A DNA stretch of 64,000 nt, from positions 124,001 through 188,000 of IMG/VR virus record IMGVR_UViG_3300022698_000267. One strand, written 5' to 3'. The notes under the pieces were generated by a model. The model saw only the letters and a list, made by a program, of their open reading frames with translations, ran no database searches and was not told the DNA's origin. Below are positions 6,698 to 33,219 of the stretch, in pieces. The translations under genes and the position numbers were made by a program. The stretch's first letter is position 1. Each line of letters starts with the position of its first letter.

Positions 6698-6878
6698 TTT
6701 AACTAGGAGAACAAATGGAAGATTCTAAAGCTCAACAATGTGTCGTTGACATTCGAAAATGGGCTATGGGAATGGTTAATTGTTCTCATGCACTCTGTTC
6801 AATAGCAGAAGCAGGTTATGAAGAACGTTATGGAAATGAAGTATTGAAAATCATTGAAAAATATGAGAAGTAAATAAA

Positions 6879-7055
6879 ATGAAACAAACTAAAACAGTTA
6901 CAGGAAAGATTACTTCTAAAGCTCCTCCGTTCCAAGAGATTGAAAGGGGATCTAAAGACAGAAAAAGTCTCGGCCCCTATGTACATCTTACGCTGGAAAT
7001 GGATTATGAGAAGTTGGAGGCTAGAATCGCAAAGTATTTCAATATGGATGCTTAA
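6879..7055 (+). CDS. small hypothetical protein resembling DNA polymerase A motif remnants
   Basis: VTGKITSKAPPFQEI and MDYEKLEARI resemble PolA TGRLSS..PN.Q.I and D.SQ.ELRI. Confidence 0.4.
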   Translation: MKQTKTVTGKITSKAPPFQEIERGSKDRKSLGPYVHLTLEMDYEKLEARIAKYFNMDA

Positions 7056-7069
7056 CTATGAGAACAAAT

Positions 7070-7364
7070 GCCTGGGTGGCGGAACTTTGGTAGACGCAAG
7101 GGACTTGATTTAAATTGAGCCTTTATAGGGAAACTTATAAAGTGGACACTGCTAAAACGGGGAAACCTTAACAGATATGCTGATGGCAATCCCGTGCTAA
7201 CCGAAAGGTGAGTGTAGAGACTTTATACAGTGCATCTAAGTCTAAGGATAAGATGAAGAGAAAGTCCAGACCACAAACTATTTTTATAGGCGATGAAAAT
7301 CGTAGTGGTATGAAAATCCCTCGATCGCAAGGTCGTGCGGGTTCGATTCCCGCCCTAGGCACCA
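7070..7364 (+). tRNA. tRNA-Leu(TAA) interrupted by a group I intron
   Basis: Exons 7070-7106 and 7313-7364 join to loop CT-TAA-AA; CCA. Confidence 0.9.
7107..7312 (+). mobile_element. group I intron (tRNA-Leu UAA, IC3-like), no homing endonuclease ORF
   Basis: P AAAACGGGGAAACC, Q AATCCCGTGCT, R GTGTAGAGACT, S AAGAGAAAGTCC, terminal G before AAAATCCC. Confidence 0.9.
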
Positions 7365-7372
7365 AAATATGC

Positions 7373-7448
7373 GGGTTGGTAGCTCAGTTGGTAGAGCAGG
7401 GGACTGAAAATCCCCGTGTCAAAGGTTCGATTCCTTTCCGGCCCACCA
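7373..7448 (+). tRNA. tRNA-Phe(GAA)
   Basis: Cloverleaf, loop CT-GAA-AA, CCA. Confidence 0.95.
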
Positions 7449-7453
7449 TAAGC

Positions 7454-7529
7454 GCCACCGTAGCTCAGTTGGTAGAGCAATCGGCCGATAACCGATAGGT
7501 CGGGTGTTCAATTCACCCCGGTGGCACCA
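7454..7529 (+). tRNA. tRNA-Ile(GAT), C33
   Basis: Anticodon stem ATCGG/CCGAT, loop CC-GAT-AA, CCA. Confidence 0.88.
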
Positions 7530-7532
7530 TAT

Positions 7533-7707
7533 AATTAAATATTGACTGCACCCGTGGACCATAGTGGGTATTGTGGGCTCGCGACCTATCAAGATACCAC
7601 AAAGTCGCCCGACTTGGGGAGATGCGGAACTGGAACTTTTGGATTCACACCGGTCAATGAGCCATTAGGAAAGGATAAGTGCCGTCGGGTGCAGTGAATA
7701 TTTAATT
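7533..7707 (+). ncRNA. candidate structured ncRNA (175 nt)
   Basis: ATTAAATATTGACTGCACCCG / CGGGTGCAGTGAATATTTAAT closing stem with 1 mismatch, between two tRNAs, no ORF. Confidence 0.6.
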
Positions 7708-7708
7708 T

Positions 7709-7785
7709 GCGCTCATAGCTCAGCTGGACAGAGCAGGAGCCTTCTAAGCTTCAGGTCGTAGGTTCGAATCCTACTGGGCGTACCA
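7709..7785 (+). tRNA. tRNA-Arg(TCT)
   Basis: Cloverleaf, loop CT-TCT-AA, CCA. Confidence 0.95.
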
Positions 7786-7802
7786 TAAATTTCATAAAGT
7801 AC

Positions 7803-7831
7803 TTGACTTTTTGTTCCATATCCTATATAAT
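7803..7831 (+). promoter_or_regulatory. sigma70-type promoter (copy 4)
   Basis: TTGACT-17-TATAAT. Confidence 0.85.
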
Positions 7832-7856
7832 AAATTAAAAAATTAAGGAGGGAGCA

Positions 7857-8057
7857 ATGAGTGAGTACACTGTTCAAAGTGCAGATCCAAAGGAATTGAT
7901 TGCTGTGATTTCAAATCATGAATGGAAATGGGCAGATGTTAAAGCTACGAGAAAAGAAAATCTAGTGACTGTTCAGGAATTAGCAGGTAATTGTCTCGAT
8001 GAACTTGATGCAATTTTGGATTCTGTTCCCGGCAGTTACTACATACTATCTCATTAG
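7857..8057 (+). CDS. small hypothetical protein
   Basis: AAGGAGG RBS behind promoter. Confidence 0.7.
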   Translation: MSEYTVQSADPKELIAVISNHEWKWADVKATRKENLVTVQELAGNCLDELDAILDSVPGSYYILSH

Positions 8058-8071
8058 ATATTGTATCATGC

Positions 8072-8498: not shown

Positions 8499-8520
8499 TT
8501 AAAATAATTTCAAATAATAC

Positions 8521-9085: not shown

Positions 9086-9098
9086 ATTCAAATAGTAC

Positions 9099-11126: not shown

Positions 11127-11590
11127 ATGTTTGTACAATGGAGTTGTGGATGTGTTGGACTAAAACTCAGGAACCGTTGCATTGTTATGGATTCCTGTAA
11201 TGAAGTTCATACTAAAACTAAGATTAAACAAGAGGTACTTATTTCTTCTGATCTTCATAACTATCCATATATTCCTTTAACTATTCAGAAGGCAGAAATC
11301 TATACGGATAGATTTTGCGAATTGCTTGAAACTTGTATTGGAGGTATATAATGTTTGTACAATGGAGTTGTGGATGTATTGGTTTGTTATTGGATGATGT
11401 TTGCATCGTTATTGACGAGTGTGATGGTCCAGATACTTTGAGTTTTAAACCACGTCCGGATCTTGCAGATAAGTCCTATCATCCTATATCTCGTGGTCAT
11501 CGAGCTGATCTCATTGAAAAAATGGAGACACAGATGGTGGATGGTTATAAATGGGAAACTTTCTTGGAGCTTGTACATAAAGACGATTAA
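11127..11590 (+). CDS. two tandem paralogous small proteins (11127-11351 and 11351-11590)
   Basis: Both start MFVQWSCGC(V/I)GL with identical first 27 nt. Confidence 0.7.
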
Positions 11591-11681
11591 CTTATAGAAC
11601 AAAATATCCCTCCCAACCCAACCCTGAAGATTAAGGGATCATTTCTGATCCCTTTTTCTTTGTAAAAAGTTCAAATAGTAC

Positions 11682-12926: not shown

Positions 12927-13202
12927 ATGGTAGAGAAAATTAAAAAGTATTTTGAGTTGAAGGACCAGATGAAAGCTTTGGATACGGAGCTGAAGGGGAT
13001 TCGGGATGATATTTTCACTGCGTTCGGCGGAGCCAAAGTTGAAATCGAGGTTGATGGTACCAAGGTTCGGTGTCAAACCAAAACACGTTCCACCAAGCGT
13101 TGCAGTTGGGACGCCCTCAAGGAGGCCAACGAAGATCTTTACAATCGTGTGGTAACCGAATCTGAGTCTTCCTACTACGAGCTGAGAAAATTGGCTCGTT
13201 AG
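12927..13202 (+). CDS. small hypothetical protein, paralog of 30818-31093
   Basis: Shared YFELKDQ..KVRCQTK..TESESSYYELRKLAR. Confidence 0.8.
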   Translation: MVEKIKKYFELKDQMKALDTELKGIRDDIFTAFGGAKVEIEVDGTKVRCQTKTRSTKRCSWDALKEANEDLYNRVVTESESSYYELRKLAR

Positions 13203-13215
13203 TTACCCACCCCAC

Positions 13216-13235
13216 TGGGGGGCTTCGGCCCCCCA
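13216..13235 (+). terminator. GC hairpin with C(UUCG)G tetraloop
   Basis: TGGGGGGC-TTCG-GCCCCCCA; similar hairpins near 31814 and 32544. Confidence 0.6.
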
Positions 13236-13813
13236 CCCATTCTTTCAGCTTCCTATCCAATCTGCAAACAATCGTTGCAAACTGCTTAACTATATGAACA
13301 AAGGATGAATATTACTAAATACTTTCTAAGGAGGGGAAGTATGAAAGAAATCAACTTACGTTACATGCTTTCTATTCATCCTGGACTTGGAATTTACAGA
13401 TTATGTATTGTATTTGCAGAGGATGAAGAGAACTATTATGGTCATTGGGTCGTTGATGTTGGAGATTTCAAGACTAAGTTTCCGAAGAAGGGGACCAGAG
13501 CATTGACTGAAGAAGAGGTAGAGAATTACAACAGTTTTCGTTTTAGAAGAACGAAAGGTATTGTATTCGAAATTAAGATGAATTACGATGGTACTCCGAA
13601 AGGACTGAAGAAAAAATTTGAGTAATTTATGGAAAAGGTAAGAGATCAATTAGAGAAAGCATTCGAATATCTTACAGAGTGTGAGAAACAACCAACCTTC
13701 TTTTGCTTGGAACAAATGGAGAAGTACATTCGAAGATCCCTTACTTTTGTTGAGGAAGAAAGAACAAGAATAAATATGAAAATGCGTTTATTGAAAAAAA
13801 ATTCAAAAATTAC

Positions 13814-13842
13814 TTGACATTCTACTAAAATTTTGTTATACT
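13814..13842 (+). promoter_or_regulatory. sigma70-type promoter (copy 11)
   Basis: TTGACA-17-TATACT. Confidence 0.85.
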
Positions 13843-13886
13843 ACATTTAAGAGGTTGGGGATAACATTTAAACAAGGAGGAAGCAA

Positions 13887-14264
13887 ATGGGTAACGTAGA
13901 AAAGAAAGAAGGATACAATCAAGTTTGTGTATGGCCGGGAACCGTGCTTGGTGAAAGTACACCAGCAGATTTTGAGAAGTGGTTGAAGGACGAGTTTGGG
14001 GTTGAAGGTCAGTACTTGGAGGAAATCGAAACCAGTCCTGATATGGAGAATGGAAAACCGGTTTCCAATACTGGCGGTCGAAGCGATTTATTCTTCGCCA
14101 TTCACGATGAAGACGTTGACAAGTTTGTCCTTCCCAAGCTTCGAATAGGAGCCCGATGGGTCGAAGATGTTCTGGCCGATGTCAATTACACCTCCCCTAT
14201 CTATCCAAAACGGGTTTTCGACTATTGTTCCTGGAACAAAGAAAATCTTGCTGTCTCGGCGTAA
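13887..14264 (+). CDS. hypothetical protein
   Basis: AAGGAGG RBS, 125 aa. Confidence 0.75.
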   Translation: MGNVEKKEGYNQVCVWPGTVLGESTPADFEKWLKDEFGVEGQYLEEIETSPDMENGKPVSNTGGRSDLFFAIHDEDVDKFVLPKLRIGARWVEDVLADVNYTSPIYPKRVFDYCSWNKENLAVSA

Positions 14265-14289
14265 AACATACTAAACTAATAGAACAAAC

Positions 14290-14379
14290 GGCGGGTTGTC
14301 CGAGTCTGGTTAATGGTGCTTGACTTGAAATCAAGTGGATGTAAAAGTCCCGTGGGTTCGAATCCTACACCCGCCGCCA
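14290..14379 (+). tRNA. tRNA-Ser(TGA)
   Basis: Long variable arm, loop CT-TGA-AA, G73, CCA. Confidence 0.95.
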
Positions 14380-14401
14380 ACAACTAACTAAGAGAACAAA
14401 T

Positions 14402-14809
14402 ATGGATATTACTTGGGGTGAAGCACAGGAGTTAGTTCAAGACTTAGCAAAGTGGATAAGAGAGAAGAATCTTTTAGCCATAACAAGAGGAGGTCTTGTC
14501 CCTGCTGCTATGCTATCTCATGTAAATGACTTCGACATTATCGATACAGTATGCATTACAAGCTACGTAGACCGGCAACAAGGGCAGTTAAGAGTTTCCA
14601 AATGTCCTGACATAGGGACTGGCTTAGGATGGTTTATACTTGACGATATCGTCGATTCAGGTGAGACCATAAAAACTCTTAGAAGATTATTTCCTGATGC
14701 TCAATACGGAGCATTGATTGCAAAACCCGATGGGGTTGATCAGATCAACTCTTATTCTCTTTTAGTTCCACAAGATACATGGGTAATTTTTCCTTGGGAG
14801 AAAGACTAA
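14402..14809 (+). CDS. purine phosphoribosyltransferase (Gpt-like)
   Basis: AITRGGLVPA, ILDDIVDSGET PRPP-binding loop, WVIFPWE. Confidence 0.9.
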   Translation: MDITWGEAQELVQDLAKWIREKNLLAITRGGLVPAAMLSHVNDFDIIDTVCITSYVDRQQGQLRVSKCPDIGTGLGWFILDDIVDSGETIKTLRRLFPDAQYGALIAKPDGVDQINSYSLLVPQDTWVIFPWEKD

Positions 14810-15180
14810 TGGCAAAATCAAGTATGAAGGATATTGTTAAAGCAATTCAAGAAGGTTACTACGAAAGCAAAGTTCCTTATCCTGGATCGAAACCTTTAAA
14901 GCCAAAACCTCTTCTTGGAAAAGAATACAATGAATTGAATAAAAAGGCTCTTAAAATCTATGAAGGTTTAATATCAGAGCACAACGAGAAAGTTCTGGTC
15001 TATCGAAAAGAACAAGCCAGATTAGCCAAGGAATTTCGTGAAGATGCTCTCGAGTATGTTGGATTAACTGGTCATTTGAAAGCTGATAAGGCTTTCGAAT
15101 TGGCTTGGGATAAAGGGCATAGTTCAGGACTTTATGAAGTATTAACAAATCTGGAAGAACTAGCGGAGCTTTTGATATGA
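14809..15180 (+). CDS. hypothetical protein
   Basis: Coupled start; AWDKGHSSG motif. Confidence 0.7.
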   Translation: MAKSSMKDIVKAIQEGYYESKVPYPGSKPLKPKPLLGKEYNELNKKALKIYEGLISEHNEKVLVYRKEQARLAKEFREDALEYVGLTGHLKADKAFELAWDKGHSSGLYEVLTNLEELAELLI

Positions 15181-15473
15181 ACAAGGCCTTTACATCTCCT
15201 GAGGAAGTAATAGCTTATCTTACTGAATGTACGTTGGCAACGGTTATTACAATGGCGTCTAAAAAAAGACGTTCGCAGAATGAATTTAATCGTCAAATAA
15301 GTATTGCTCAAACTGGAATAGATGCTTTAATACAGTTTAAAGTTCCTATTCCACTTAATTCAGGCTATGGAAGAGTTGATGTTGTTCTTAATGATTACAA
15401 ACAATCTGTTAAGGATTGGGTTGTTAGTAAGATGGAGGAGTGGCCGAGTCAGGTCAAGGCAGCAGTTTGCTAA
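15177..15473 (+). CDS. hypothetical protein, paralog of 16044-16310; 3' end overlaps tRNA-Ser
   Basis: AYLTECTLATV.TMA.KKR shared with 16044. Confidence 0.7.
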   Translation: MNKAFTSPEEVIAYLTECTLATVITMASKKRRSQNEFNRQISIAQTGIDALIQFKVPIPLNSGYGRVDVVLNDYKQSVKDWVVSKMEEWPSQVKAAVC

Positions 15474-15522
15474 ACTGTCGAATGTAAAAGTTCCGGGGGT
15501 TCAAATCCCTCCTCCTCCGCCA
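15434..15522 (+). tRNA. tRNA-Ser(GCT)
   Basis: Long variable arm, loop TT-GCT-AA, G73, CCA. Confidence 0.93.
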
Positions 15523-15541
15523 AAATAATTTCAAATAATAC

Positions 15542-15570
15542 TTGACATTTTCATTCATTTCCTATATAAT
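15542..15570 (+). promoter_or_regulatory. sigma70-type promoter (copy 12)
   Basis: TTGACA-17-TATAAT; nearly identical to copy 5. Confidence 0.85.
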
Positions 15571-15761
15571 AGATTTAAGTGGTTGGGGGAAATATTAATA
15601 CGGAGGAAAGATAATGAAACCTACTAAATTCCTTTGTTCCAATGCCAAAGATTTTTGTTGTGGAAAAGCTAACAAGTTGACCATGAAAGGTGTCATTCGG
15701 GCCATTTGTAAGAAAGAAGCCAAGATCGAAATCAAAGAACAGTTGGTGGAAGATAAGTAAT

Positions 15762-15848
15762 GGGTCGGTGTGCTTAGTGGCGAGAGCAGCGGACTGTAAA
15801 TCCGTGACAAATGAAACATCGTGGGTTCGACTCCCACCCGGCCCTCCA
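15762..15848 (+). tRNA. tRNA-Tyr(GTA)
   Basis: Loop CT-GTA-AA, long variable region, CCA. Confidence 0.9.
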
Positions 15849-16043
15849 CTTAACTAGGAGAACAAAATGAGTGTTTCTATTAAACTTACGGAAAAAGAGC
15901 ATTTTGATGTTATCAGACCTTTTACATCTATCATCGTTCCTGGAATGCGATATATTGGACAATGGTCTGGCGGTCCAATCGTTAAATTTGATGAAGAATC
16001 AGAATCTTACAAAAGATTTCTTGAATTACATGAGGGGTAGTAA

Positions 16044-16310
16044 ATGCACTTTTATCATATAGCTTCTTCAGAAGATGCATTGGCCTATTTGCTAGATTGT
16101 ACTTTGGCTACTGTGGAAACAATGGCTGAAAAGAAGAGGATTCCTAAGTATGAATATGAACGTCATGTTGGAATAGCACAGAGGAATTTGGAATTGTGTA
16201 GGAAGTTCGATTGTAATATTGCTGGAACCAGAGGACAGAAGGTGATGGAAGAGTTTAATGGTGATGTTTCAGAATATGGACTTTCTATTCAAATACAAAC
16301 TAATACTTGA
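16044..16310 (+). CDS. hypothetical protein, paralog of 15177
   Basis: AYLLDCTLATVETMAEKKR. Confidence 0.7.
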   Translation: MHFYHIASSEDALAYLLDCTLATVETMAEKKRIPKYEYERHVGIAQRNLELCRKFDCNIAGTRGQKVMEEFNGDVSEYGLSIQIQTNT

Positions 16311-16335
16311 CAAAACCTTTCAAATACACTATAAT
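16307..16335 (+). promoter_or_regulatory. sigma70-type promoter (copy 13) driving a candidate ncRNA
   Basis: TTGACA-17-TATAAT; boxA-like TGTTCTTTGAAAA at 16357-16369. Confidence 0.8.
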
Positions 16336-16365
16336 AGTATAAGAAGTTGGAATTTTTGTTCTTTG

Positions 16366-16683
16366 AAAAAGGAAGTTAAGCTGGAGAAAGCGACAATTGT
16401 GAAACGATGCACTTAGAGTCGAAGTAGCTTTGCAGCTTTAATTGATGGGATTCCCCCGGTTAGACCCCCTTGTCCGTCCACAACTGGTGGACGCGGCGGC
16501 TGACGGTCCTGGATGAAGAACAGCCGCCCTTTTTGGGTTCCGGGAATTGCTGGAATTTGCCAGTGTATAAAGCGGTTTTGGTTCTGAAGCCCAACGGTAC
16601 CCATACGTGAATATGATAAGACATCCGGAGTCTTAACTTAATGAACAAGTCAAATAATTGGCCTCCAGTTTAACTTCCTTTTT
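16366..16683 (+). ncRNA. candidate large structured ncRNA (about 318 nt)
   Basis: 21-bp terminal stem 16366-16386/16663-16683 with one G-U; several internal GC hairpins; no credible ORF. Confidence 0.7.
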
Positions 16684-16697
16684 GAATGAACAATTAT

Positions 16698-16772
16698 CGC
16701 GGGTTAGCCAAGAGGTAAGGCACCAGACTCATATTCTGGAGATCGTGGGTTCGATTCCCACACCCGCAACCA
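16698..16772 (+). tRNA. tRNA-Met(CAT), initiator-like acceptor
   Basis: C1-A72 mismatch (CGCGGGT/ACCCGCA), loop CT-CAT-AT, CCA. Confidence 0.9.
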
Positions 16773-16818
16773 AATTTTTATACCTTCATTAAAATTCTCA
16801 AAAATCAGTAAATAATAC

Positions 16819-16847
16819 TTGACTTTTATTTCTAGATATTATATAAT
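16819..16847 (+). promoter_or_regulatory. sigma70-type promoter (copy 14)
   Basis: TTGACT-17-TATAAT. Confidence 0.8.
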
Positions 16848-17047
16848 ATTGGAAATAAAAGTTAGTCATCATGGAGAATTTAAATGACAAAACAATCAAA
16901 GATTATGGTGACAATGCGGGTTCAGAAAACAATTGCCTTTGAAAATTTTGAAGACGATTATGTTGGTCAATTGAATGAGATGATTGGTCAATTGAATAAT
17001 CTGGGTTACGCAGTTGATGTTGAGTCAGAAGATGATGTTTAATATGC

Positions 17048-17126
17048 AGTCCCTTAGTCTAGTCTGGTCTATGACGCCAGCCTGTCACGCTGGAGATCGC
17101 GGGTTCAAATCCCGTAGGGACTGCCA
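17048..17126 (+). tRNA. tRNA-Asp(GTC)
   Basis: Loop CT-GTC-AC, G73, CCA. Confidence 0.95.
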
Positions 17127-17133
17127 AAACCTT

Positions 17134-17211
17134 GGACCCTTAGACCAAAATGGTAAAGGTCATGGGACTTTCAATCCCATAACGCGGGTTCAATTCCCGC
17201 AGGGTCTACCA
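17134..17211 (+). tRNA. tRNA-Glu(TTC)
   Basis: Loop CT-TTC-AA, CCA. Confidence 0.93.
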
Positions 17212-17417
17212 TAATACTAAAAGGGTTTTGTATGAGCACATTAGATCCTTTCTTACGTTTGGCAGAAGATTCTTTATACATGTTAAGAGATCGATCTAGA
17301 TTGGGAGTAGATATGATGAACATACGAACTGACTCACCTACACATAAGAAAAACATTAAGAAGAAATGCAAACGGAAGATTGTTAAAGCATCACGAAGAA
17401 GGAATCGTTAACTAAAT

Positions 17418-17494
17418 GGGTCGCGTAGCTCAGTTGGGAGAGCGTCTGCCCTGCAAGCAGAAGGTCCCGGGTTCGAGCCCCGGCCGATCCACCA
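17418..17494 (+). tRNA. tRNA-Ala(TGC), C33
   Basis: G3-U70 pair, loop CC-TGC-AA, CCA; one-base bulge in the acceptor stem. Confidence 0.88.
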
Positions 17495-17513
17495 TCAAAA
17501 AAAGGATAAGATT

Positions 17514-17954
17514 ATGGGTATTAAAAGAATTTTATTTCTACCAATCTTATTCCTGTCTTTAGTACTTCCCTTCAAAGTTTATTCTGCAGATTCCATATAT
17601 GTTACTGGTTCTCATGAATTTGAACCATTAGATTACATAACCTACTTTGGAACAACAGACAAGACAATTACAATGGCATGGGATGCAGCAGAAAATGCGG
17701 TAAAATACGATATTCGTTTGTATCATGTAGAACAACATGTTTATCTTAAGTATGGATATGTAGAAGGTTTACAAGTTTCTTTAAAACTTCCAAAGACAGG
17801 ACACTATATTCCTGAGATAAGATCGGTTGGAACTACTGATGATCAGGTAAGTGAATGGGTAACTTCATTGACAGCGGGTACTGTCAATGGAGAGTTAAAA
17901 CCCTGGTGGCTTTATGGTTACGTAGCACCACCAGGACCAATAATCATTAATTAG
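17514..17954 (+). CDS. secreted fibronectin-type-III-like protein
   Basis: Signal peptide; TMAWDAAENAVKYDI..Y.PEIRSV pattern. Confidence 0.55.
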   Translation: MGIKRILFLPILFLSLVLPFKVYSADSIYVTGSHEFEPLDYITYFGTTDKTITMAWDAAENAVKYDIRLYHVEQHVYLKYGYVEGLQVSLKLPKTGHYIPEIRSVGTTDDQVSEWVTSLTAGTVNGELKPWWLYGYVAPPGPIIIN

Positions 17955-17967
17955 GGAGGGTATTAAC

Positions 17968-18300
17968 ATGGCAATAGTAAAGAAAGTAACATTATCATTT
18001 CCACCTTCAGGATCACCGGATGTTGTTGGTTATAATCTATACATCGTACCGGTCCCAGAGGTAGTGGATGAAACTGGTGCAGATGGGAATTACATTGCAA
18101 ATCCTTATGATTTGGGGAACACAACAAGTGTAGATTTGTCAACAATTCCAGGTATGACTACCAATGATGGGACTTACAACATTGGTGTAACAGCGGTTGA
18201 TGATGCCGGCAATGAATCGTCAATGTCTGTAACAACAAATGTCCCTTTAGATTTTGCTGCCCCAGATGCCCCAGGCGAGCTTGTCATAACAAGGTCGTAA
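17968..18300 (+). CDS. fibronectin-type-III-like protein
   Basis: VVGYNLY..YNIGVTAVDDAGNES..APDAPG. Confidence 0.65.
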   Translation: MAIVKKVTLSFPPSGSPDVVGYNLYIVPVPEVVDETGADGNYIANPYDLGNTTSVDLSTIPGMTTNDGTYNIGVTAVDDAGNESSMSVTTNVPLDFAAPDAPGELVITRS

Positions 18301-18459
18301 ATAAAGTTCTGGGAGTGTTTTGCAGCATATCTCATTTCATGGGGTTCTGTAAAAGGTAAAGAAAGAACAATCTACTAAAATATCAGTATATGGCCGGATT
18401 AGGTCCGAGTAAAATCCCTTTCCTCCACCTAATCTGGCCATTTTAACTAAGGGAACAAA

Positions 18460-18957
18460 ATGGATCTTTTAGAAACTCTTGAATTTATTAAAGAGGCTCA
18501 TAAGGGACAGGTAGATAAAGCAGGTAAACCTTATTGGAAACATCCATATTCCGTTAGAATTCTTCTTGGTCCTAATGCAACGTTCGAAGAACAACAATTA
18601 GCTTTGTTACATGATATTCTGGAAGATACGAAATGGACTGCAGAAGATTTGCTAACTCATGGTATTTCAAAAGAAGTTGTAGAAGCTCTAATTATCATCA
18701 GTAAACCTGAGGAAATGACTTTAACATACATGGATTGGATTCGCAGTATCATAGATACTAACAACGAATTAGCTATAAAAGTAAAGTATGCAGACCTTAT
18801 GCATAATTCATTTCCTTGGAGAATTGAACAATTGCCTGTAGAAGAACAGAGTATTGCTAAGCGTTACGATAGAGCGAAGAAGTTAATTGATAAATGGATA
18901 ATAAGTAATAACAATCAAGATCCTGGTTGGAATTATTTATTGGATGTGACTGTGTAG
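18460..18957 (+). CDS. HD-domain hydrolase, RelA/SpoT-hydrolase (Mesh1/SAH)-like
   Basis: AHKGQVDKAGKPYWKHP, LLHDILEDT, VKYADLMHN. Confidence 0.85.
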   Translation: MDLLETLEFIKEAHKGQVDKAGKPYWKHPYSVRILLGPNATFEEQQLALLHDILEDTKWTAEDLLTHGISKEVVEALIIISKPEEMTLTYMDWIRSIIDTNNELAIKVKYADLMHNSFPWRIEQLPVEEQSIAKRYDRAKKLIDKWIISNNNQDPGWNYLLDVTV

Positions 18958-19033
18958 GGCCTGTAGCTCAGTTGGCTAGAGCCCCCGGCTCATAACCGGA
19001 TGGTCAAAGGTTCGAATCCTTTCAGGCCCACCA
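18957..19033 (+). tRNA. tRNA(CAT), probably Ile2
   Basis: GGGCCTG acceptor, CCGG-CT-CAT-AA-CCGG arm resembling lysidine-modified Ile2, CCA. Confidence 0.85.
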
Positions 19034-19052
19034 AAATAAATTCAAATAGTAC

Positions 19053-19081
19053 TTGACAAATCCTCTCATTTATACTATAAT
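19053..19081 (+). promoter_or_regulatory. sigma70-type promoter (copy 15)
   Basis: TTGACA-17-TATAAT. Confidence 0.85.
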
Positions 19082-19120
19082 AGATAGTACGATAAGAGGA
19101 TTTTTCATGAGGGGACTAAA

Positions 19121-19732
19121 ATGGATCAATTGAAAGTAGATGAATTAAAGACAGTCGAAACTTACCGGAAAGACAAATGTGCATGGTTTTGTTCGAAAAG
19201 AGATCCTTACTGGGAACTATCGAATATTGCTGCAATACCGGTTGTTTTTGGAGCAATAACGTGTAATTCTTCGGAACAACTTTATCAGGCTACCAAATAT
19301 GACTGGGATGTTGAATGTCTTCCCGAAGATGCTAAACCTGGAACTGATCCTAATGTGAAAAGAAGGATTCTGGCGGCGAAAAATGCTATGGGTTCTAAGA
19401 TGACACAGAAGTGTGCTGTAAAAGCTGGTCTAGTTCGGAGGGATTGGTATGCTCCAGAAGAGATGAGAATACATACAATGCTTTGGGTCCTGGAATTAAA
19501 ATTGTGGAATAACAAAGATACGTTTGGAGCGGTCCTTAAAAGCACTGGTGATTTGCCAATCGTTGAGAAGTCTCGTAAGGATAATTTCTGGGGAGCTATT
19601 CCTATGGGTATAGGGAATATGATTGGTTGTAACATATTGGGTAAACTTCTAACTATTTTGCGTGACGAAAAATTTGATAAAGTTTTGAAAGGCACTTTTA
19701 CTTACCCAATGGACGGTCTTTTTCTCCTGTAA
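19121..19732 (+). CDS. NADAR (YbiA/DUF1768) family protein
   Basis: LSN..SSEQLYQATKY, LKSTGD.PIVEKS.KDNFWG, GCNILGKLL. Confidence 0.85.
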   Translation: MDQLKVDELKTVETYRKDKCAWFCSKRDPYWELSNIAAIPVVFGAITCNSSEQLYQATKYDWDVECLPEDAKPGTDPNVKRRILAAKNAMGSKMTQKCAVKAGLVRRDWYAPEEMRIHTMLWVLELKLWNNKDTFGAVLKSTGDLPIVEKSRKDNFWGAIPMGIGNMIGCNILGKLLTILRDEKFDKVLKGTFTYPMDGLFLL

Positions 19733-19760
19733 AATAATTTAAAAAAGTTGTAAATAATAC

Positions 19761-19789
19761 TTGACAAAACCTCTAAAATCTGTTATACT
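19761..19789 (+). promoter_or_regulatory. sigma70-type promoter (copy 16)
   Basis: TTGACA-17-TATACT. Confidence 0.85.
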
Positions 19790-20064
19790 ACCTTTAAGAC
19801 GTTGGGGAGAACATTTAAATAAGGGGATAGAATGAGATACGATACTTGGGAAGAAAAACGGTTGGATGAAGAAATTGATCGTGAATGGTGGGAGAAAATG
19901 AAAGAAAATGTGAGAAAAGAGAAGGAGAAAAAAGAGAAGTAGTTATATGGGGGGTTCGCCCCCCAATTAAATCGTTAACTATAAGAACAAAGAAAGGGGG
20001 GGCTTATTATGCGCTATTGCTAAATTCTTCTAACTAAATGAACAAAATACTAAAACATAAAGTG

Positions 20065-20221
20065 TATGGGGCATAAGACCCCCGCTTTGCCGGCCAGCGC
20101 CCCTGGAACAGAATAAGATCGGGCGCCTAATGACCGGCCTGCCGGCCTAGTTGGGATGGGCCAATAATACATCCCCTTTTAATACATAGATATGGGCCTC
20201 AACGGGGGTGGGCACCCCATA
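20065..20221 (+). ncRNA. candidate GC-rich structured ncRNA (about 157 nt)
   Basis: TATGGGG/CCCCATA and ACCCCCG/CGGGGGT closing stems; arms GCGCCC/GGGCGC and GGGATG/CATCCC. Confidence 0.6.
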
Positions 20222-20350
20222 GATTAAACTAGTGGGCCGGGAGGTGCCAATGCTAAAAGTGACTTTAAAAAGCGCTTGCTTGCATATCAGGCGCTGAGAC
20301 ATAAATGTTTAAATATGCATTTACGTTATTATAAAAGTTCGCTTATCACA

Positions 20351-20398
20351 GAGAAAAGAAAGGGGTGCCGGCAAGGTCGACACCCCTTTTTCTTTCTC
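20351..20398. terminator. bidirectional intrinsic terminator-like hairpin
   Basis: GAGAAAAGAAAGGGGTG..CACCCCTTTTTCTTTCTC. Confidence 0.7.
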
Positions 20399-20413
20399 GA
20401 CAAAACATTATGT

Positions 20414-20953
20414 ATGTTAACAAGACAAGTAAAAGATCGTTACCCTTATGGTGCTCCTAATCCTAAACCACTTCCACAATGGTTTTATAAACTGGATCTG
20501 GACCGTTTTAACATCCTTGTTCGTAAACCTGTTGATGTTGTTAACTTTGTGATCGAACATATGATATATACTACGGATCAAGAAGCTCATCAAGTTCCTG
20601 AGTATTGGTTACAAAGTCCAGAAGATATATACACATGGTTATTTGATAAGAGAATGGATGATTGTGATGGTTCAGCTATTACAGTGGCAAGTATATTGTA
20701 TAGTCTTGGTAACCCTCACGTTCGTTTGGCATTAGGATATTATGGAAACGATGCTTATGCTAATACAAAAGTATTTCAGATGAACCATGCTTATTGTTTA
20801 CTAGAGATTGGTCCTAGTAAATACAAATTATTAGATGCAGTAGGTGATAGACCTGTAGAGTGGTTAGAGGACATTGATTTTTGCCCTCTTTACCATACAA
20901 TGATCAGTGCATCGGCAGATGGTAGAGTTTGGTATCATAATTCTTGGGTGTGA
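20414..20953 (+). CDS. transglutaminase-like cysteine protease fold protein
   Basis: DDCDGSAIT, NHAYC and LLDA give a plausible C-H-D triad. Confidence 0.65.
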   Translation: MLTRQVKDRYPYGAPNPKPLPQWFYKLDLDRFNILVRKPVDVVNFVIEHMIYTTDQEAHQVPEYWLQSPEDIYTWLFDKRMDDCDGSAITVASILYSLGNPHVRLALGYYGNDAYANTKVFQMNHAYCLLEIGPSKYKLLDAVGDRPVEWLEDIDFCPLYHTMISASADGRVWYHNSWV

Positions 20954-25430: not shown

Positions 25431-25459
25431 TTGACTTTTCTTCTAAAATATACTATAAT
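25431..25459 (+). promoter_or_regulatory. sigma70-type promoter (copy 19)
   Basis: TTGACT-17-TATAAT. Confidence 0.8.
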
Positions 25460-25533
25460 TATGTAAAGGAAGAAAGAGCTACTCTTTCTTAACTTATAGA
25501 ACAAATACTAATACTTAGTAATGGAGTAGTAAA

Positions 25534-29605: not shown

Positions 29606-30346
29606 ATGTCACAGTTAGTTTTTGCCGGACATCCAAAGGCTAGTTTGGTATGGCATCAGTATGTTTATGGTAGATTTTGTAAGGAATTAAATTTATCTAT
29701 ACAGTGGGTAACCCGTTTAAGTGATTCTAAGAAGTATTTAGATGAAAATAAGTGTGATTTCCTATTTTACAAGAGTTCAACAGGCTCTCAGATTATGGAA
29801 GATATGATAGGATTTCATATCTATAGAAATCCACGTGATATGTTGGTATCCGGATACTATTCATCTAAATTCAGCCATCCAGCTGATAACCATCCAGTCC
29901 TTCAAGAACACAGAAAGAAATTGCATCAAGTTAACATGGAAGAAGGATTGATACTGGAGATGGATTATTTGAATGATTACTTCAATGACATGAGAGGATG
30001 GTGCTGGGACAATACGAATATCCTTAACATACCTATGGAGGAACTATTTAGTTCACCAGCCGAGATCCTGTTAAACACAATAAAAATTGCAAGACATATG
30101 GGTTTTCTTAAAGGTTATGGTTATGAAAGACCCACTTATCTTACCGAAGCTACCATAACAAGGACTTTAGATGATTATAGCTTTGAAAATCTTACAAAAA
30201 GGAAGAAAGGTGAGGAAGATTCAAAACATCATTTTAGAAAAGGTACACCAAATGATTGGAAAAACCATTGGACGGATAAAGTAGATAAGGAATTTACGGC
30301 TCGTTATGGTGACATTATTGCTGAGTACGATTATGATAAAGATTAG
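29606..30346 (+). CDS. sulfotransferase-domain protein
   Basis: HIYRNPRDMLVSGY (3'-PB motif), HFRKG..NDWKNH. Confidence 0.85.
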   Translation: MSQLVFAGHPKASLVWHQYVYGRFCKELNLSIQWVTRLSDSKKYLDENKCDFLFYKSSTGSQIMEDMIGFHIYRNPRDMLVSGYYSSKFSHPADNHPVLQEHRKKLHQVNMEEGLILEMDYLNDYFNDMRGWCWDNTNILNIPMEELFSSPAEILLNTIKIARHMGFLKGYGYERPTYLTEATITRTLDDYSFENLTKRKKGEEDSKHHFRKGTPNDWKNHWTDKVDKEFTARYGDIIAEYDYDKD

Positions 30347-30736: not shown

Positions 30737-30765
30737 TTGACAAAATCGGTTGCAGATTATATAAT
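30737..30765 (+). promoter_or_regulatory. sigma70-type promoter (copy 23)
   Basis: TTGACA-17-TATAAT. Confidence 0.85.
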
Positions 30766-30817
30766 ACGTTTAAGTGGTTGGGGAAATGGTTAAAATTTTA
30801 AAAGGGGGGTAGTTAAA

Positions 30818-31093
30818 ATGATCGAGAAAATCCAGAGATATTTCGAGTTGAAGGACCAAATCAAAGTTTTGGACGATGAGTTGAAAGCCATTCGAAGTGA
30901 AGTTTCCACCCTATTTGGTGGGGCTAAAGTTGAAATCGAAGTCGACGGTTCCAAGGTCCGTTGCCAAACCAAAAAACGTTCCACCAAAAGTTGTGATTGG
31001 TCCACGTTTAAGGAAGTCAATGAGCATCTTTACAATCAGATAGTCACCGAATCTGAGTCTTCCTACTATGAGCTGAGAAAATTGGCTCGCTAA
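30818..31093 (+). CDS. paralog of 12927-13202
   Basis: High identity, same stop position (TAA here, TAG there). Confidence 0.8.
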   Translation: MIEKIQRYFELKDQIKVLDDELKAIRSEVSTLFGGAKVEIEVDGSKVRCQTKKRSTKSCDWSTFKEVNEHLYNQIVTESESSYYELRKLAR

Positions 31094-31244
31094 TCATCTC
31101 CTAAAAGTGGTGGTGGGGCAACCCACCATCCACGTTTAACTTGCCGAACAAAGCCTCCAGCGTTTAACTATATGACCAAAGCTACTTTCAGCTATCGAAT
31201 GGAAACGCTTGTCAAAATTATTTGCAAGAAAGTTCAAAAAGTAC

Positions 31245-31273
31245 TTGACAAAATCGGTTGTAGCCTATATAAT
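31245..31273 (+). promoter_or_regulatory. sigma70-type promoter (copy 24)
   Basis: TTGACA-17-TATAAT. Confidence 0.85.
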
Positions 31274-31321
31274 AGAGGCAAGTGGTTAGGGAAATGGTTA
31301 AAATTTAAGGGAGGTAGTAAA

Positions 31322-31807
31322 ATGCAAATACATGAATTGAACAGCGGTTTCTTACGATCACCTGAAGCAATAAATAATGTGCAGATGGTACGAGGTGGAG
31401 CACCGATTGAAGTCAAGAAGGATGATGAGCAGAAGACATACGTTGCAATCGGTAACGTTCAGGGCAGAAGCCTTGCCAAAGGAATGGTCGTGTTGGCCTC
31501 CTACAACGAAGGTAATCAAGGAGCTGACTTGGTTGAGGTGCTAGGGTTCACAAGTGATAAGGAACACTATGGTGAGGGTGGTGTTGCCTTTGAATCAGCA
31601 AAAGAAATGCTCAAACATTATGGTGTAAAGAGCCTTCAAGAGCTGGAAGACCTGCAGGACAAGAATGAGTATGGGTACCACTCTTATTTAGTTGTTCGGG
31701 ATTTGAACGATGACGAAGAAGGTGCCTGGTATTACCTCTACGAAGGTCGATGGGCAAGGGGTTCCGGTGCGGAGAAATTATCCTTCGTCAGAATGAATTT
31801 ACAGTAA
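31322..31807 (+). CDS. hypothetical protein
   Basis: GGAGG RBS behind promoter. Confidence 0.7.
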   Translation: MQIHELNSGFLRSPEAINNVQMVRGGAPIEVKKDDEQKTYVAIGNVQGRSLAKGMVVLASYNEGNQGADLVEVLGFTSDKEHYGEGGVAFESAKEMLKHYGVKSLQELEDLQDKNEYGYHSYLVVRDLNDDEEGAWYYLYEGRWARGSGAEKLSFVRMNLQ

Positions 31808-31949
31808 CGATCAGGGGGCTTCGGCCCCCATTTTCATAACCTGCCTGGCGTTTAACTATAAGACCAAAACAGCTAACGGATACTGGAATTTGTACGTCAA
31901 TGATTCCTTGAAATATCAAATACTATTTGCAAGAAAGTTCAAAAAGTAC

Positions 31950-31978
31950 TTGACATTTTGTCTCCAAGACATTATAAT
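31950..31978 (+). promoter_or_regulatory. sigma70-type promoter (copy 25)
   Basis: TTGACA-17-TATAAT. Confidence 0.85.
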
Positions 31979-32227
31979 AGAGGTAAGAGGTTGGGGGAAA
32001 TACTGCTAAAGGGAGATACAAAATGGCAAAGAAATTATTGGTTGATAAGGTAAGGGTGACAGGGAAAGACGAAAATGGCTACCGTGCTATCGAAGTTGAT
32101 AGGGCTGGTGAACCTTTAAGTTTTCCCATTATGTTTTCCGATACAAGCATCTCGCAACAAGGCATTGACAAGCTTATTAAGCTGATAAAGAAAGAAATGG
32201 CCTTAATATAAAAAGTTCAAAAAGTAC

Positions 32228-32256
32228 TTGACAAAACCTCCTCAAGACATTATAAT
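32228..32256 (+). promoter_or_regulatory. sigma70-type promoter (copy 26)
   Basis: TTGACA-17-TATAAT. Confidence 0.85.
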
Positions 32257-32298
32257 AGAGGTAAGAGGTTGGGGAAATAGAAAAGAGGGGGAAATAAA

Positions 32299-32535
32299 AT
32301 GGAGCAAGTTATAGAGAATTTAGAAGTACAGGGAATTACCTGCAGGGCCAACGTAATTACCGAACATGGTGACTTTGAAGTGGTTGGGGTTATCGCCGGT
32401 AACGAAGTTGATCAATTAAGGCTTGAAACCATTCTCGAGAACAGGAAAGCGGAATTTGATTTTGAGAACCTTGTTGAGAGAAGGCTCATTGAAGAAGCAG
32501 AGGAAGATTATCAAGAACCGGACGATTGGTACTAA
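32299..32535 (+). CDS. small acidic hypothetical protein
   Basis: GAGGGGG RBS behind promoter. Confidence 0.65.
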   Translation: MEQVIENLEVQGITCRANVITEHGDFEVVGVIAGNEVDQLRLETILENRKAEFDFENLVERRLIEEAEEDYQEPDDWY

Positions 32536-32745
32536 TAATCTAATGGGGGCTTCGGCCCCCAAAGGAGGTATAAAAATGTTCGAGTCGACTCCGTGGTGGT
32601 TAATTTTGGTAGAAATTTCTGCTGGTGGTATTTGGTGTGTAGCAGTAACCTACTACCTTATTAAAATGTGCAGGGCAGTTTCGAGTTAAAATCATAGGGG
32701 GGCTTAAAAAGCCCCCATTTCTTTGCAAGAAAGTTCAAAAAGTAC

Positions 32746-32774
32746 TTGACATTTCTACCATAATCCGTTATAAT
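32746..32774 (+). promoter_or_regulatory. sigma70-type promoter (copy 27)
   Basis: TTGACA-17-TATAAT. Confidence 0.85.
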
Positions 32775-33055
32775 AGAGGTAAGAGGTTGGGGAACCTAAT
32801 TATAAAATGGGAGGTAGCAAATGGAAAAAGTAAAAGGAGTAGACAGGAAGACTTACAAAAAAGCGCTTCGGTATCTTTCGAAGAAATTCGGTCTCAAGAA
32901 GTCAGATTTTGAATTCGAGGCAGCCTGGATTGATGAGTACGTTCGTTGTCTCCTTTTCAGCATCATCAATGAGAAATCCCGTCTGTACAAAAGCACCGTT
33001 GGCTACCAGCTGTAGTCGATTTCTACAAGCCCCCACTTCTGGGGGCTTTTTCAGC

Positions 33056-33219
33056 CTAACTTAATGAACAAAACGTCTAGCGAGACCCGCCTGCATGCCG
33101 CTAACTTAATGAACAAAACGTCCTGCAGAGCCCAGCGGGTCCATCGCTAACTTAATGACCAAAGGCGCTAGGGTGGACCGTGGTGGCCCGGCGGCCACTC
33201 CTCTAACTTAATGACCAAA
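33056..33219 (+). repeat. 4 x CTAACTTAATGA(A/C)CAAA separated by GC-rich spacers
   Basis: Core motif at 33057, 33102, 33148 and 33204. Confidence 0.9.

What the first reader, a model, noticed from the sequence alone, without database searches (positions are those of the whole stretch)
6700..33219. Unexplained 16-bp motif TAACT-N4-GA(A/C)CAAA, 19 copies on one strand
Seen at 6700, 7053, 11588, 13287, 14273, 14385, 15851, 16634, 18444, 19976, 20031, 25490, 31137, 31165, 31853, 33057, 33102, 33148 and 33204 (two have one mismatch). Spacing is fixed at 4 nt. Copies sit right before or after tRNAs, after hairpins or just before start codons. Inference: strict polarity and position suggest an RNA-level site (processing, nut-like antitermination) or a polar DNA-binding site.
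Basis: seen in the sequence. Interest (0 to 1): 0.65.

Follow-up and report, generated by a model that had tools for sequence, protein, structure and literature searches.

The report
Conserved jumbo-phage early-region signal
A 16-20 base signal (YNYY-TAACT-WA-NN-GAACAAA) marks the head of genes, tRNAs and small RNAs in the early region of an uncultivated 273-kb phage and of at least three related phages, always on the transcribed strand; it is real and conserved, but sequence alone cannot say whether it is a phage-specific promoter or an RNA cutting site.

Summary
There are 17 exact and 2 one-mismatch copies, all on the + strand and all intergenic (0.02 expected by chance). The rest of the 273,563-bp phage genome has no further copy.

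New here: the same motif, with the same fixed 4-nt gap, occurs about 48 more times on the gene strand in four metagenomic contig sets from three related phages (L124/L118, L142/L104/L145, L159). It stays intact where the flanks and the N4 have diverged.

It lies in the distal half of a host-sigma70-driven early region with 42 near-perfect TTGACA-17-TATAAT promoters. It sits at the head of expression units:
- 0-2 nt before an ATG or a tRNA 5' end;
- 10-60 nt before an SD-ATG;
- in front of small terminator-ended RNAs;
- 12-140 nt upstream of early promoters, often after U-tract-less C(UUCG)G hairpins and often in arrays of 2-7 copies.

No phage RNA polymerase, RegB, MotA, RegA, RNase III or NusG was found. 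There is one divergent sigma factor and ADP-ribosylation enzymes.

My ranking is: delayed-early/middle promoter with RNA 5' ends at its 3' edge, about 0.4; RegB/S1-like RNA processing site, about 0.3; binding-only regulator, about 0.2. Only 5'-end mapping can decide.

The parts
6700..6715 (+). motif copy TAACTAGGAGAACAAA; 2 nt after tRNA-Leu(CAA); N4+G forms an SD; ATG overlaps the last A
7053..7068 (+). motif copy; its TAA is the stop of ORF 6879-7055; ends 1 nt before tRNA-Leu(UAA) 7070-7364 (206-nt intron)
11588..11603 (+). motif copy; its TAA is the stop of ORF 11351-11590; followed by a C-rich ~57-nt segment ending in an intrinsic terminator (11633-11654 plus T tract)
13287..13302 (+). 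motif copy 51 nt after hairpin 13216-13235; 38 nt before an SD-ATG (13341)
14273..14288 (+). one-mismatch copy (AAACT...); ends 1 nt before tRNA-Ser(UGA); overlaps an ATACTAA element
14385..14400 (+). motif copy 5 nt after tRNA-Ser; ATG of the phosphoribosyltransferase gene 1 nt after it
15851..15866 (+). motif copy 2 nt after tRNA-Tyr; AGGAG in N4; ATG directly follows
16634..16649 (+). one-mismatch copy (...CAAG); 48 nt before tRNA-Met; the same variant recurs in relative L104
18444..18459 (+). motif copy after a long-stem hairpin; ATG of the HD phosphohydrolase gene directly follows
19976..19991 (+). motif copy 10 nt after hairpin 19948-19965; followed by an SD plus a 4-codon mini-ORF; orthologous copy in L124
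20031..20046 (+). motif copy abutting ATACTAAAACAT and a conserved GC-rich structured RNA (20047-20398) that ends in a terminator
25490..25505 (+). motif copy in the 5' UTR between sigma70 promoter 25431-25459 and ATG 25534; directly after a 9-bp hairpin
31137..31180 (+). two copies (31137, 31165) 12 nt apart, after hairpin 31111-31128 and 64 nt before sigma70 promoter 31245
31853..31868 (+). motif copy 23 nt after hairpin 31814-31829 and 81 nt before sigma70 promoter 31950
33057..33219 (+). array of four copies (33057, 33102, 33148, 33204; periods 45/46/56) with GC-rich spacers, 8 nt after terminator-like hairpin 33027-33048, at the end of the early region and upstream of the histidine-kinase operon

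Best explanation
The motif is a strand-specific 'head-of-unit' expression signal of a family of uncultivated jumbo phages. My most likely reading is a phage-class (delayed-early/middle) promoter read on double-stranded DNA by the host RNA polymerase after phage reprogramming. The candidate reprogramming factors are the early-encoded divergent sigma factor at genome 106723-107754 and the ADP-ribosylating enzymes. In this reading TAACTW acts as a -10-like element: T and A sit at the two critical first positions, and T sits at the last position in 38 of 60 copies. Transcription would then start 7-8 nt downstream, inside the invariant CAAA. RNAs would begin 0-4 nt before the docked ATGs (near-leaderless mRNAs) or tRNA 5' ends, or would carry short 5' UTRs, or would be small terminator-ended RNAs. 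The SD-like N4 seen when an ATG follows would serve the longer read-through transcripts from upstream sigma70 promoters. What is shown: the motif is real, polar, intergenic, confined to the early region and conserved in relatives, and it always lies upstream of something transcribable. What is inferred: that it acts on DNA, where the start site lies, and which protein reads it.
For: (1) There are 19 copies on one strand, none elsewhere in 273 kb, and all are intergenic. (2) The same motif occurs on the gene strand about 48 more times in three related phages. The 12 fixed positions are kept while N4 and flanks diverge, including at orthologous positions. (3) Every copy is followed by a unit. 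An ATG lies at -1 to +2 nt (window 6700, 14385, 15851, 18444; L124:98, L124:5623). A tRNA starts at +1 (7053, 14273). An SD-ATG lies 11-62 nt away. A terminator-ended short RNA follows (11588; L124:2955). A conserved ncRNA follows (20031; L124:5125). Or a sigma70 promoter lies 12-140 nt away, as in tandem promoters. (4) In L124 a 179-aa gene starts directly at the motif's 3' edge with no SD in N4. In L159 its homolog lies 23 nt behind a motif copy. This argues that an RNA 5' end forms at the motif. (5) The geometry fits a -10 element plus a start site, and the motif is self-contained, with no conserved flank. (6) The genome programme is T4-like: consensus early promoters with UP-like sequence, an early sigma gene behind the first early promoter, and an ADP-ribosyltransferase. 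Further upstream elements, ATACTAA and TAAAAC(C/A)TT, appear at other genes. An extra temporal promoter class inside the early region is therefore expected (PMC2988021).
Against: No phage RNA polymerase was found: Pfam T7-type and beta/beta' searches, the DFDGD motif and the T7 motifs A/B/C were all negative. Near-invariance over 12 positions is unusual for a host-polymerase promoter. The sigma factor has regions 2 and 4, which predicts a -35/-10 pair about 17 bp apart, and no such partner is conserved. Arrays with only 5-nt spacers (21-nt period, up to 7 copies) are awkward for independent promoters of a large polymerase. N4 is SD-like in the four window copies where an ATG follows, so there the motif is read as RNA. 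Several copies are followed by another promoter-like element before the gene (13287, 20031, 25490, 33204), so the motif is not needed as a promoter there. W is A, not T, in 37% of copies.
Confidence: 0.4

Rival explanations
1. The motif is an RNA processing (punctuation) site in early polycistronic transcripts. A sequence-specific endoribonuclease, either a phage ORFan or a host enzyme, would recognise UAACU. Ribosomal protein S1 or a similar factor would bind the A-rich GAACAAA 4 nt downstream, by the logic of T4 RegB/S1. Cleavage would free tRNAs and small RNAs, set short 5' UTRs or cut off SDs, and leave the upstream mRNA ending in its protective hairpin.
For: The 3' half G-A-A-C-A-A-A fits the S1-dependent part (G-R-A-Y-A-R-A) of the RegB/S1 site GGAGRAYARAA; copies 6700 and 15851 (AGGAGAACAAA) fit 10 of 10 positions (PMC1702504). 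Like RegB sites, the motif is confined to early transcripts and overlaps SDs. Most copies follow a tRNA or a GC hairpin, often C(UUCG)G, that lacks a U tract. Such hairpins look like RNA 3'-end stabilisers rather than terminators. Arrays with 5-40-nt spacers are natural for RNA sites. In the window's array, GC-rich spacers fold so that copies lie in linkers or in a loop (z = -2.4). The bare pentamer TAACT is about 10-fold enriched within 14 nt of tRNA ends in the window, L124 and the distant phage L017.
Against: No RegB, RNase III or other nuclease or RNA-binding domain was found in the genome or among 66 early ORFs. The invariant GGA of RegB sites is absent from most copies. Predicted RNA accessibility of the motif is no higher than that of A-rich intergenic controls or in-place permutations (0.64 vs 0.57, p = 0.056; 0.62). 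The window array follows a terminator-like hairpin with a U tract (33027-33048). Other tRNA-gene junctions in the same cluster lack the motif.
Confidence: 0.3
2. The motif is a binding-only regulatory site that creates no RNA end. On RNA it would serve a translational repressor or enhancer, an S1-type leader, or an antitermination or stabilising factor. On DNA it would serve a regulator or roadblock that controls the adjacent early promoters and read-through.
For: Arrays of 3-7 copies lie 24-80 nt upstream of consensus early promoters in L142, L145 and L159. Copies overlap ribosome-binding sites. The half-site centres are about 10 bp apart, which suits a protein touching two successive major grooves. 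Two copies lie in 5' UTRs between a sigma70 promoter and the ATG (25490; L124:5623).
Against: Array periods (21, 28, 34, 36, 43, 45, 46, 55, 56) are not helically phased. Distances to promoters vary from 12 to 140 nt. Copies 1 nt before tRNAs and before terminator-ended RNAs have no translational role. There is no NusG-, RegA- or MotA-like gene and no HTH among the early ORFs scanned. There is no boxB-like hairpin partner. Docking at unit starts is better explained by formation of an RNA 5' end.
Confidence: 0.2
3. The motif is a recombination or mobility scar of shuffled early-gene cassettes, or a replication, nicking or packaging site, with no role in gene expression.
For: The early regions of these phages are mosaics of small cassettes with repeated promoters and hairpins, and gene order differs between relatives. 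tRNA-Ser is flanked by two copies (14273, 14385). One array in L159 lies next to iteron-like repeats.
Against: The 12 fixed positions are kept across about 66 copies in phages whose flanks have diverged to 70-80% identity, while the flanks of copies are unrelated. The motif is not palindromic and has no inverted-repeat partner. GC skew shows no origin at the array. Seven nicks at 21-nt spacing would be implausible.
Confidence: 0.07

Closest known systems
Phage-specific promoters with a short, nearly invariant sequence ending at the start site (T7/T3/SP6 type)
   Same: A self-contained ~17-bp element, nearly invariant, on one strand, in intergenic positions directly upstream of units. No conserved sequence lies outside it, and units begin at its 3' edge.
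   Different: No single-subunit RNA polymerase gene was detectable. The central 4 bp are free, whereas T7-type promoters are specific there (my knowledge). Arrays with 5-nt spacers are not known for them.
T4 temporal promoter classes (middle: MotA box + sigma70 -10; late: TATAAATA with gp55)
   Same: The phage depends on the host polymerase, has strong consensus early promoters and an ADP-ribosyltransferase, and encodes an early specificity factor. An extra signal class is embedded in the early region, co-oriented with early transcription, tRNA region included (PMC2988021).
   Different: There is no MotA or AsiA, no box at -30, and no separate -10 at 12 +/- 1 bp. The motif is far less degenerate than MotA boxes.
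T4 RegB/S1 endoribonuclease target sites (GGAGRAYARAA)
   Same: An 11-16-nt single-stranded RNA signal in early transcripts, in intergenic regions and SDs, on the sense strand only. The A-rich 3' part matches GAACAAA (PMC1702504).
   Different: There is no RegB homolog. The invariant GGA is missing in most copies. The extra invariant UAACU, the arrays and the tRNA-adjacent copies are not RegB features.
Mobile regulatory cassettes of T4-type phages (promoter-early stem-loops, PeSL; recalled from memory, Arbiol et al. 2010, not read here)
   Same: Repeated promoter, hairpin and signal modules lie between small early genes, and gene order is shuffled between relatives.
   Different: PeSLs are the early promoter plus terminator themselves. 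Here the motif is an additional, distinct element lying between the hairpin and the promoter or gene.

Membership tests
T7-type single-subunit RNAP promoter | The genome encodes a T7-like RNA polymerase | tested here: not met
   PF00940 six-frame search found nothing, although no control genome rang either. No ORF carries two or more of the T7 motifs A, B, C or TxxGR.
T7-type single-subunit RNAP promoter | A ~17-23-bp near-invariant element ending at the transcription start | tested here: inconclusive
   The element is 16-20 bp and near-invariant, and units dock at its 3' edge. No start site was mapped.
Multisubunit phage RNAP promoters (phiKZ/AR9 type) | Phage beta/beta'-like subunits present | tested here: not met
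   PF00562 gave no hit. PF00623 gave only E = 0.02 inside the helicase ORF. No DFDGD motif was found.
T4 middle promoter (sigma appropriation) | MotA box centred at -30, 12 +/- 1 bp upstream of a sigma70 -10 element | tested here: not met
   No conserved -10 lies downstream of the motif, and units start 0-2 nt after it. The definition comes from PMC2988021.
T4 middle promoter (sigma appropriation) | A MotA activator gene | tested here: not met
   PF09158 gave no hit.
Canonical sigma70-family promoter | -35 and -10 elements 16-18 bp apart | tested here: not met
   The two blocks are 4 bp apart and there is no conserved flank. The separate class of 42 TTGACA-17-TATAAT promoters in the same region does meet it.
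RegB/S1 cleavage site | 100% conserved GGA at the cut | tested here: not met
   GGA at the right place is seen only in copies 6700 and 15851 (PMC1702504).
RegB/S1 cleavage site | A-rich 3' consensus RAYARAA immediately downstream | tested here: met
   G-A-A-C-A-A-A fits G-R-A-Y-A-R-A in 56 of 60 copies; the four GACCAAA copies miss one position.
RegB/S1 cleavage site | A RegB nuclease gene | tested here: not met
   PF10715 gave no hit.
Lambda-type nut site / RfaH ops | boxA plus a boxB hairpin, or a 12-nt ops with a NusG paralog; placed upstream of the terminators to be overridden | tested here: not met
   No hairpin partner lies at a fixed distance, there is no NusG-family gene, and most copies follow hairpins.
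CRISPR repeat / RNA anti-CRISPR repeat units | Repeats of 23 nt or more with regular spacers | tested here: not met
   The conserved unit is 16-20 nt, and the 'spacers' range from 5 nt to whole genes and tRNAs. cas genes were not searched.
Replication iterons / partition sites | Clustered, helically phased direct repeats at one locus | tested here: not met
   Copies are spread over 26.5 kb at gene boundaries, array periods are not phased, and GC skew shows no origin at the array.

The most novel reading that the evidence does not exclude
The motif is the signal of a so far undescribed, highly specific RNA punctuation system of jumbo phages. An unknown phage endoribonuclease would read UAACU, and ribosomal protein S1 (or a similar factor) would read GAACAAA 4 nt downstream. 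The system would dice early polycistronic transcripts at fixed points, which would release tRNAs and small RNAs, create near-leaderless mRNAs and time the shut-off of early genes. This would be a RegB-like logic with a 16-nt address and no RegB homolog.
Probability: 0.25. Interest if true: 0.75.

Novelty: new variant of a known kind. Interest (0 to 1): 0.6.

Why it matters
The phage is only about 25% identical to any cultured phage in terminase and DNA polymerase, so nothing is known about its gene regulation. This motif, together with the consensus early promoters and two further upstream elements, gives a first map of its expression programme.

If the motif is a promoter, it defines a new promoter class for a host polymerase reprogrammed by a divergent phage sigma factor, and it predicts near-leaderless mRNAs and tRNAs made without long leaders.

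If it is an RNA site, it would be an unusually long and exact address for RNA cleavage or binding, which could be useful as a tool.

Either way, it is a compact, portable 16-20-nt element with a clear experimental test.

Tried and rejected
- **Sequencing runs.** None was listed for window 13000-20500.
- **IMG/VR scans.** The tandem pattern gave only unrelated tandem repeats. The L009/G001 pair lies inside an ORF, and L011 is a low-complexity 9-mer repeat with no similarity to this genome.
- **Leader scan.** Scanning for the early-leader 16-mer gave only single chance hits.
- **Protein-based searches in IMG/VR.** These gave only 41-51% relatives, and L017, the one scanned, has no full motif. 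The JGI contig L056 is identical to the window.
- **Host inference.** The histidine kinase gave only about 35% hits to various phyla.
- **RNA accessibility.** It looked significant against GC-matched controls but not against A-rich intergenic controls or in-place permutations, so it is inconclusive.
- **Small RNA against early leader.** The C-rich RNA after copy 11588 pairs with the conserved G-rich early leader no better than shuffles do (-20.1 vs -19.3 +/- 2.5 kcal/mol), so this idea is rejected as unsupported.
- **Rfam.** It finds only tRNAs.
- **Ideas considered and dropped.**
  - An antisense RNA target: there is no complementary copy in the genome.
  - IHF, LexA or Type I restriction-site likeness: the spacing or sequence is wrong.
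  - sigma54-type geometry: no such factor is present, and units start too close.
  - A Rho-loading site: that would be too unspecific for an invariant motif.
  - A terminator: it would kill the docked downstream genes.
- **Literature.** A search by sequence was uninformative.
- **Intron handling.** The tRNA-Leu intron was called on the unspliced reference only.
- **Genetic code.** No alternative genetic code was used.

Full report
**Observation.** The pattern TAACT-N4-GA(A/C)CAAA occurs 17 times exactly, and 19 times with one mismatch allowed. Shuffles expect 0.02 exact copies.

The window is bases 124001-188000 of a 273,563-bp virus record with 35.8% GC. The whole record holds no other exact copy on either strand. 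Two-mismatch hits are equal on both strands, so the motif is all-or-none.

All copies are intergenic, and twice the TAA is the stop codon of the upstream ORF. The logo is sharply bounded, with no conserved -35-like or -10-like flank.

**Setting.** The record is a jumbo phage. It encodes terminase, PolA, a helicase, ribonucleotide reductase, NAD ligase, GyrA/GyrB and a 1291-aa hybrid histidine kinase. Terminase and polymerase are only about 25% identical to any cultured phage.

Genome 105.8-156.7 kb is an early region with 42 near-perfect TTGACA-17-TATAAT promoters, all on the + strand, 19 of them scoring 12 of 12. Many share an upstream AGTAC and a conserved transcribed leader TTTAAGTGGTTGGGGA. 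The motif occupies only the distal half of this region (130.7-157.2 kb), which also holds 20 tRNA genes.

Other genes carry other upstream elements. ATACTAA(A/T) precedes many replication-type genes, and TAAAAC(C/A)TT precedes structural genes.

I found no phage RNA polymerase:
- no T7-type family hit;
- no beta or beta' subunits;
- no DFDGD motif;
- no set of T7 motifs.

There is one divergent sigma70-family ORF just behind the first early promoter. Region 2 is detected by Pfam, and a region-4-like C-terminus is my reading of the sequence. Early genes also encode an ADP-ribosyltransferase, an ADP-ribosylglycohydrolase and a NADAR protein. This is the strategy of T4, which redirects the host polymerase (PMC2988021).

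RegB, MotA, RegA, RNase III and NusG families are absent. Sixty-six further early ORFs show no nuclease, RNA-binding or HTH domain.

**Contexts in the window.**
- Copies 6700, 14385 and 15851 lie 2-5 nt after tRNA CCA ends. Copy 18444 lies after a hairpin. All four have a purine-rich, SD-like N4 and an ATG at -1 to +1 nt.
- Copy 14273 ends 1 nt before tRNA-Ser.
- Copy 7053 ends 1 nt before a tRNA-Leu(UAA) carrying a 206-nt intron. ARAGORN finds this gene only with its intron option, run on the unspliced sequence.
- Copies 13287, 19976, 31137, 31853 and 33057 follow GC hairpins, several of the C(UUCG)G type without a U tract.
- Copy 25490 lies in a 5' UTR, 31 nt after a sigma70 -10 element.
- Copy 11588 is followed by a C-rich 57-nt segment that ends in an intrinsic terminator.
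- Copy 20031 abuts ATACTAAAACAT and a GC-rich structured region that ends in a terminator.
- Four copies form an array at 33057-33219 with GC-rich spacers.

**Relatives.** IMG/VR gave no close relative. A scan of metagenome contigs for two motifs 10-40 nt apart gave 54 loci. Most are unrelated tandem repeats, but five are true relatives:
- L124 and L118 (sample Ga0114918): 17 and 3 copies, one of them shared between the two contigs;
- L142, L104 and L145 (sample Ga0209013): 10, 5 (plus 2 ...CAAG variants) and 5 copies.

All these copies are on the gene strand. The contigs carry the same consensus early promoters and are 70-84% identical to patches of this genome.

A protein search with a gene near the motif led to a further relative, L159 (sample 3300033146). 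It has 8 exact copies on the gene strand and one on the other strand, the latter breaking the W rule.

Over 60 copies, A1, A2, C3, T4, G9, A10, C12, A13 and A14 are invariant. T0, A11 and A15 are nearly so. Position -1 is always a pyrimidine and position 5 is always A or T. The logo is YNYY-TAACT-WA-NN-GAACAAA.

At an orthologous locus the same order of elements is kept in the window and in L124: hairpin, motif, SD plus 4-codon mini-ORF, motif, ATACTAAAACAT, structured RNA, terminator. N4 and the flanks differ there, but the fixed positions do not. This is strong evidence of function.

**What the relatives add.**
- *A gene with no SD.* In L124 a 179-aa gene starts directly after a copy whose N4 (AATA) is not SD-like, 6 nt behind a tRNA. 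Its homolog in L159 lies 23 nt behind a copy, and its homolog in the window also lacks an SD. This suggests that an RNA 5' end forms at the motif's 3' edge.
- *Arrays.* Periods are 21 nt (5-nt spacers, up to 7 copies) and 34 nt in the Ga0209013 contigs, 36 and 43 nt in L124, and 36 nt in L159. They are not helically phased.
- *Position relative to promoters.* Arrays often end 24-80 nt upstream of a consensus early promoter.

**Weighing the explanations.** Two readings fit every context.

*Promoter.* TAACTW would be a -10-like element with a start 7-8 nt downstream in CAAA. All copies are upstream of something transcribable, units dock at the 3' edge, and the class is confined to a delayed-early block. 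Against it:
- there is no dedicated polymerase;
- the near-invariance is unusual;
- the 21-nt arrays are awkward;
- SD-like N4 shows that the motif is also read as RNA;
- other promoter-like elements lie between some copies and their genes.

*RNA processing site.* The 3' half matches the S1-dependent part of the T4 RegB/S1 site GGAGRAYARAA (PMC1702504). Copies follow tRNAs or U-tract-less hairpins that look like 3'-end stabilisers. Arrays are natural for RNA sites. The bare pentamer TAACT is enriched at tRNA flanks, even in a distant phage. Against it:
- no nuclease was found;
- most copies lack the GGA of RegB sites;
- predicted accessibility is not above proper controls.

A binding-only regulator and a recombination or replication site fit less well.

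I put the promoter at about 0.4, processing at about 0.3, a binding-only site at about 0.2 and the rest at about 0.1. No tool here could map RNA ends, because no sequencing run was listed.

**Novelty.** The motif matches no defined family:
- T7-type promoters fail on the polymerase;
- T4 middle promoters fail on the box/-10 geometry;
- sigma70 promoters fail on spacing;
- RegB sites fail on GGA and on the enzyme;
- nut/ops sites fail on the hairpin partner and the factor;
- CRISPR repeats and iterons fail on architecture.

It works like a known kind of thing, a phage temporal expression signal, but in a new form and in an unstudied phage lineage. I rate it a new variant of a known kind, with moderate to high interest.

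Noticed in passing
window 3965-32774 (genome 105.8-156.7 kb): 42 near-perfect sigma70 promoters (TTGAC[AT]-17-TATA[AC]T; 19 score 12 of 12), all on the + strand. Many are preceded by ...AAATAGTAC. About 17 are followed at a fixed distance by a conserved transcribed leader, TTTAAGTGGTTGGGGA, whose role is unknown.
   Followed up: partly
window 7070-7364: tRNA-Leu(UAA) interrupted in the anticodon loop by a 206-nt group-I-like intron. Default ARAGORN and Rfam miss it, and Rfam reports no intron family hit. A second intron-bearing tRNA lies at 52231-52336: Rfam calls a tRNA there, and ARAGORN -i calls tRNA-Glu(CTC) with a 37-nt intron.
   Followed up: partly
window 3867-3944: A tRNA with anticodon CUA (an amber suppressor; ARAGORN labels it 'Pyl') heads the tRNA cluster. 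Several early ORFs end in TAG. I did not test recoding and used no other genetic code.
   Followed up: no
window 20047-20398; L124 5141-5540: A GC-rich, structured RNA-like region of about 350 nt with no Rfam hit. Blocks of it are 80-84% identical to the relative L124. It ends in an intrinsic terminator whose stem shows compensatory changes, and it is preceded by a conserved ATACTAAAACAT. Probably an unknown phage ncRNA.
   Followed up: partly
whole genome, e.g. genome 49212, 94498, 215295 (ATACTAA); 5503, 8466, 9613 upstream regions (TAAAACCTT); window 33243-33252: Two further upstream elements. ATACTAA(A/T) lies 20-45 nt before many replication-type genes but is absent from the structural modules. 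TAAAAC(C/A)TT lies before structural genes and before the histidine-kinase operon. They are candidate middle and late promoters.
   Followed up: partly
window 34136-38011; 44172-46622(-); 55321-57681; 29606-30346: The phage carries a 1291-aa hybrid histidine kinase (MASE3-PAS-HisKA-HATPase-receiver), both gyrase subunits and a sulfotransferase. This is unusual cargo for a phage.
   Followed up: partly
window 1298-2293; genome 110169-111080; window 19121-19732: Early genes for an ADP-ribosyltransferase, an ADP-ribosylglycohydrolase and a NADAR protein. Together they suggest T4-Alt/Mod-like modification of host proteins, with a built-in eraser.
   Followed up: no
window 11604-11660: A candidate small RNA: 22 nt of single-stranded C-rich sequence (CCCUCCCAACCCAACCC) followed by a terminator hairpin. 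Its complementarity to the G-rich early leader is no better than shuffles.
   Followed up: yes
window 19992-20030; L124 5075-5124: A 4-codon mini-ORF with a strong SD (MRYC* in the window, MHTR* in L124) lies between the two motif copies in both phages. The position is conserved but the peptide is not.
   Followed up: no
L159 14000-14188: In the relative L159, a motif array is followed directly by at least 8 iteron-like repeats (GGTCGATTGATTTAT), possibly a replication origin.
   Followed up: no
L124 1454-1476: After tRNA-Ala in L124 the sequence TAACTAAGGAGAACAAATG has a 5-nt gap instead of 4. In L159:1731 an RBS-type copy has T in place of the invariant G. RBS-type copies can therefore drift from the motif while keeping the RBS.
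   Followed up: no
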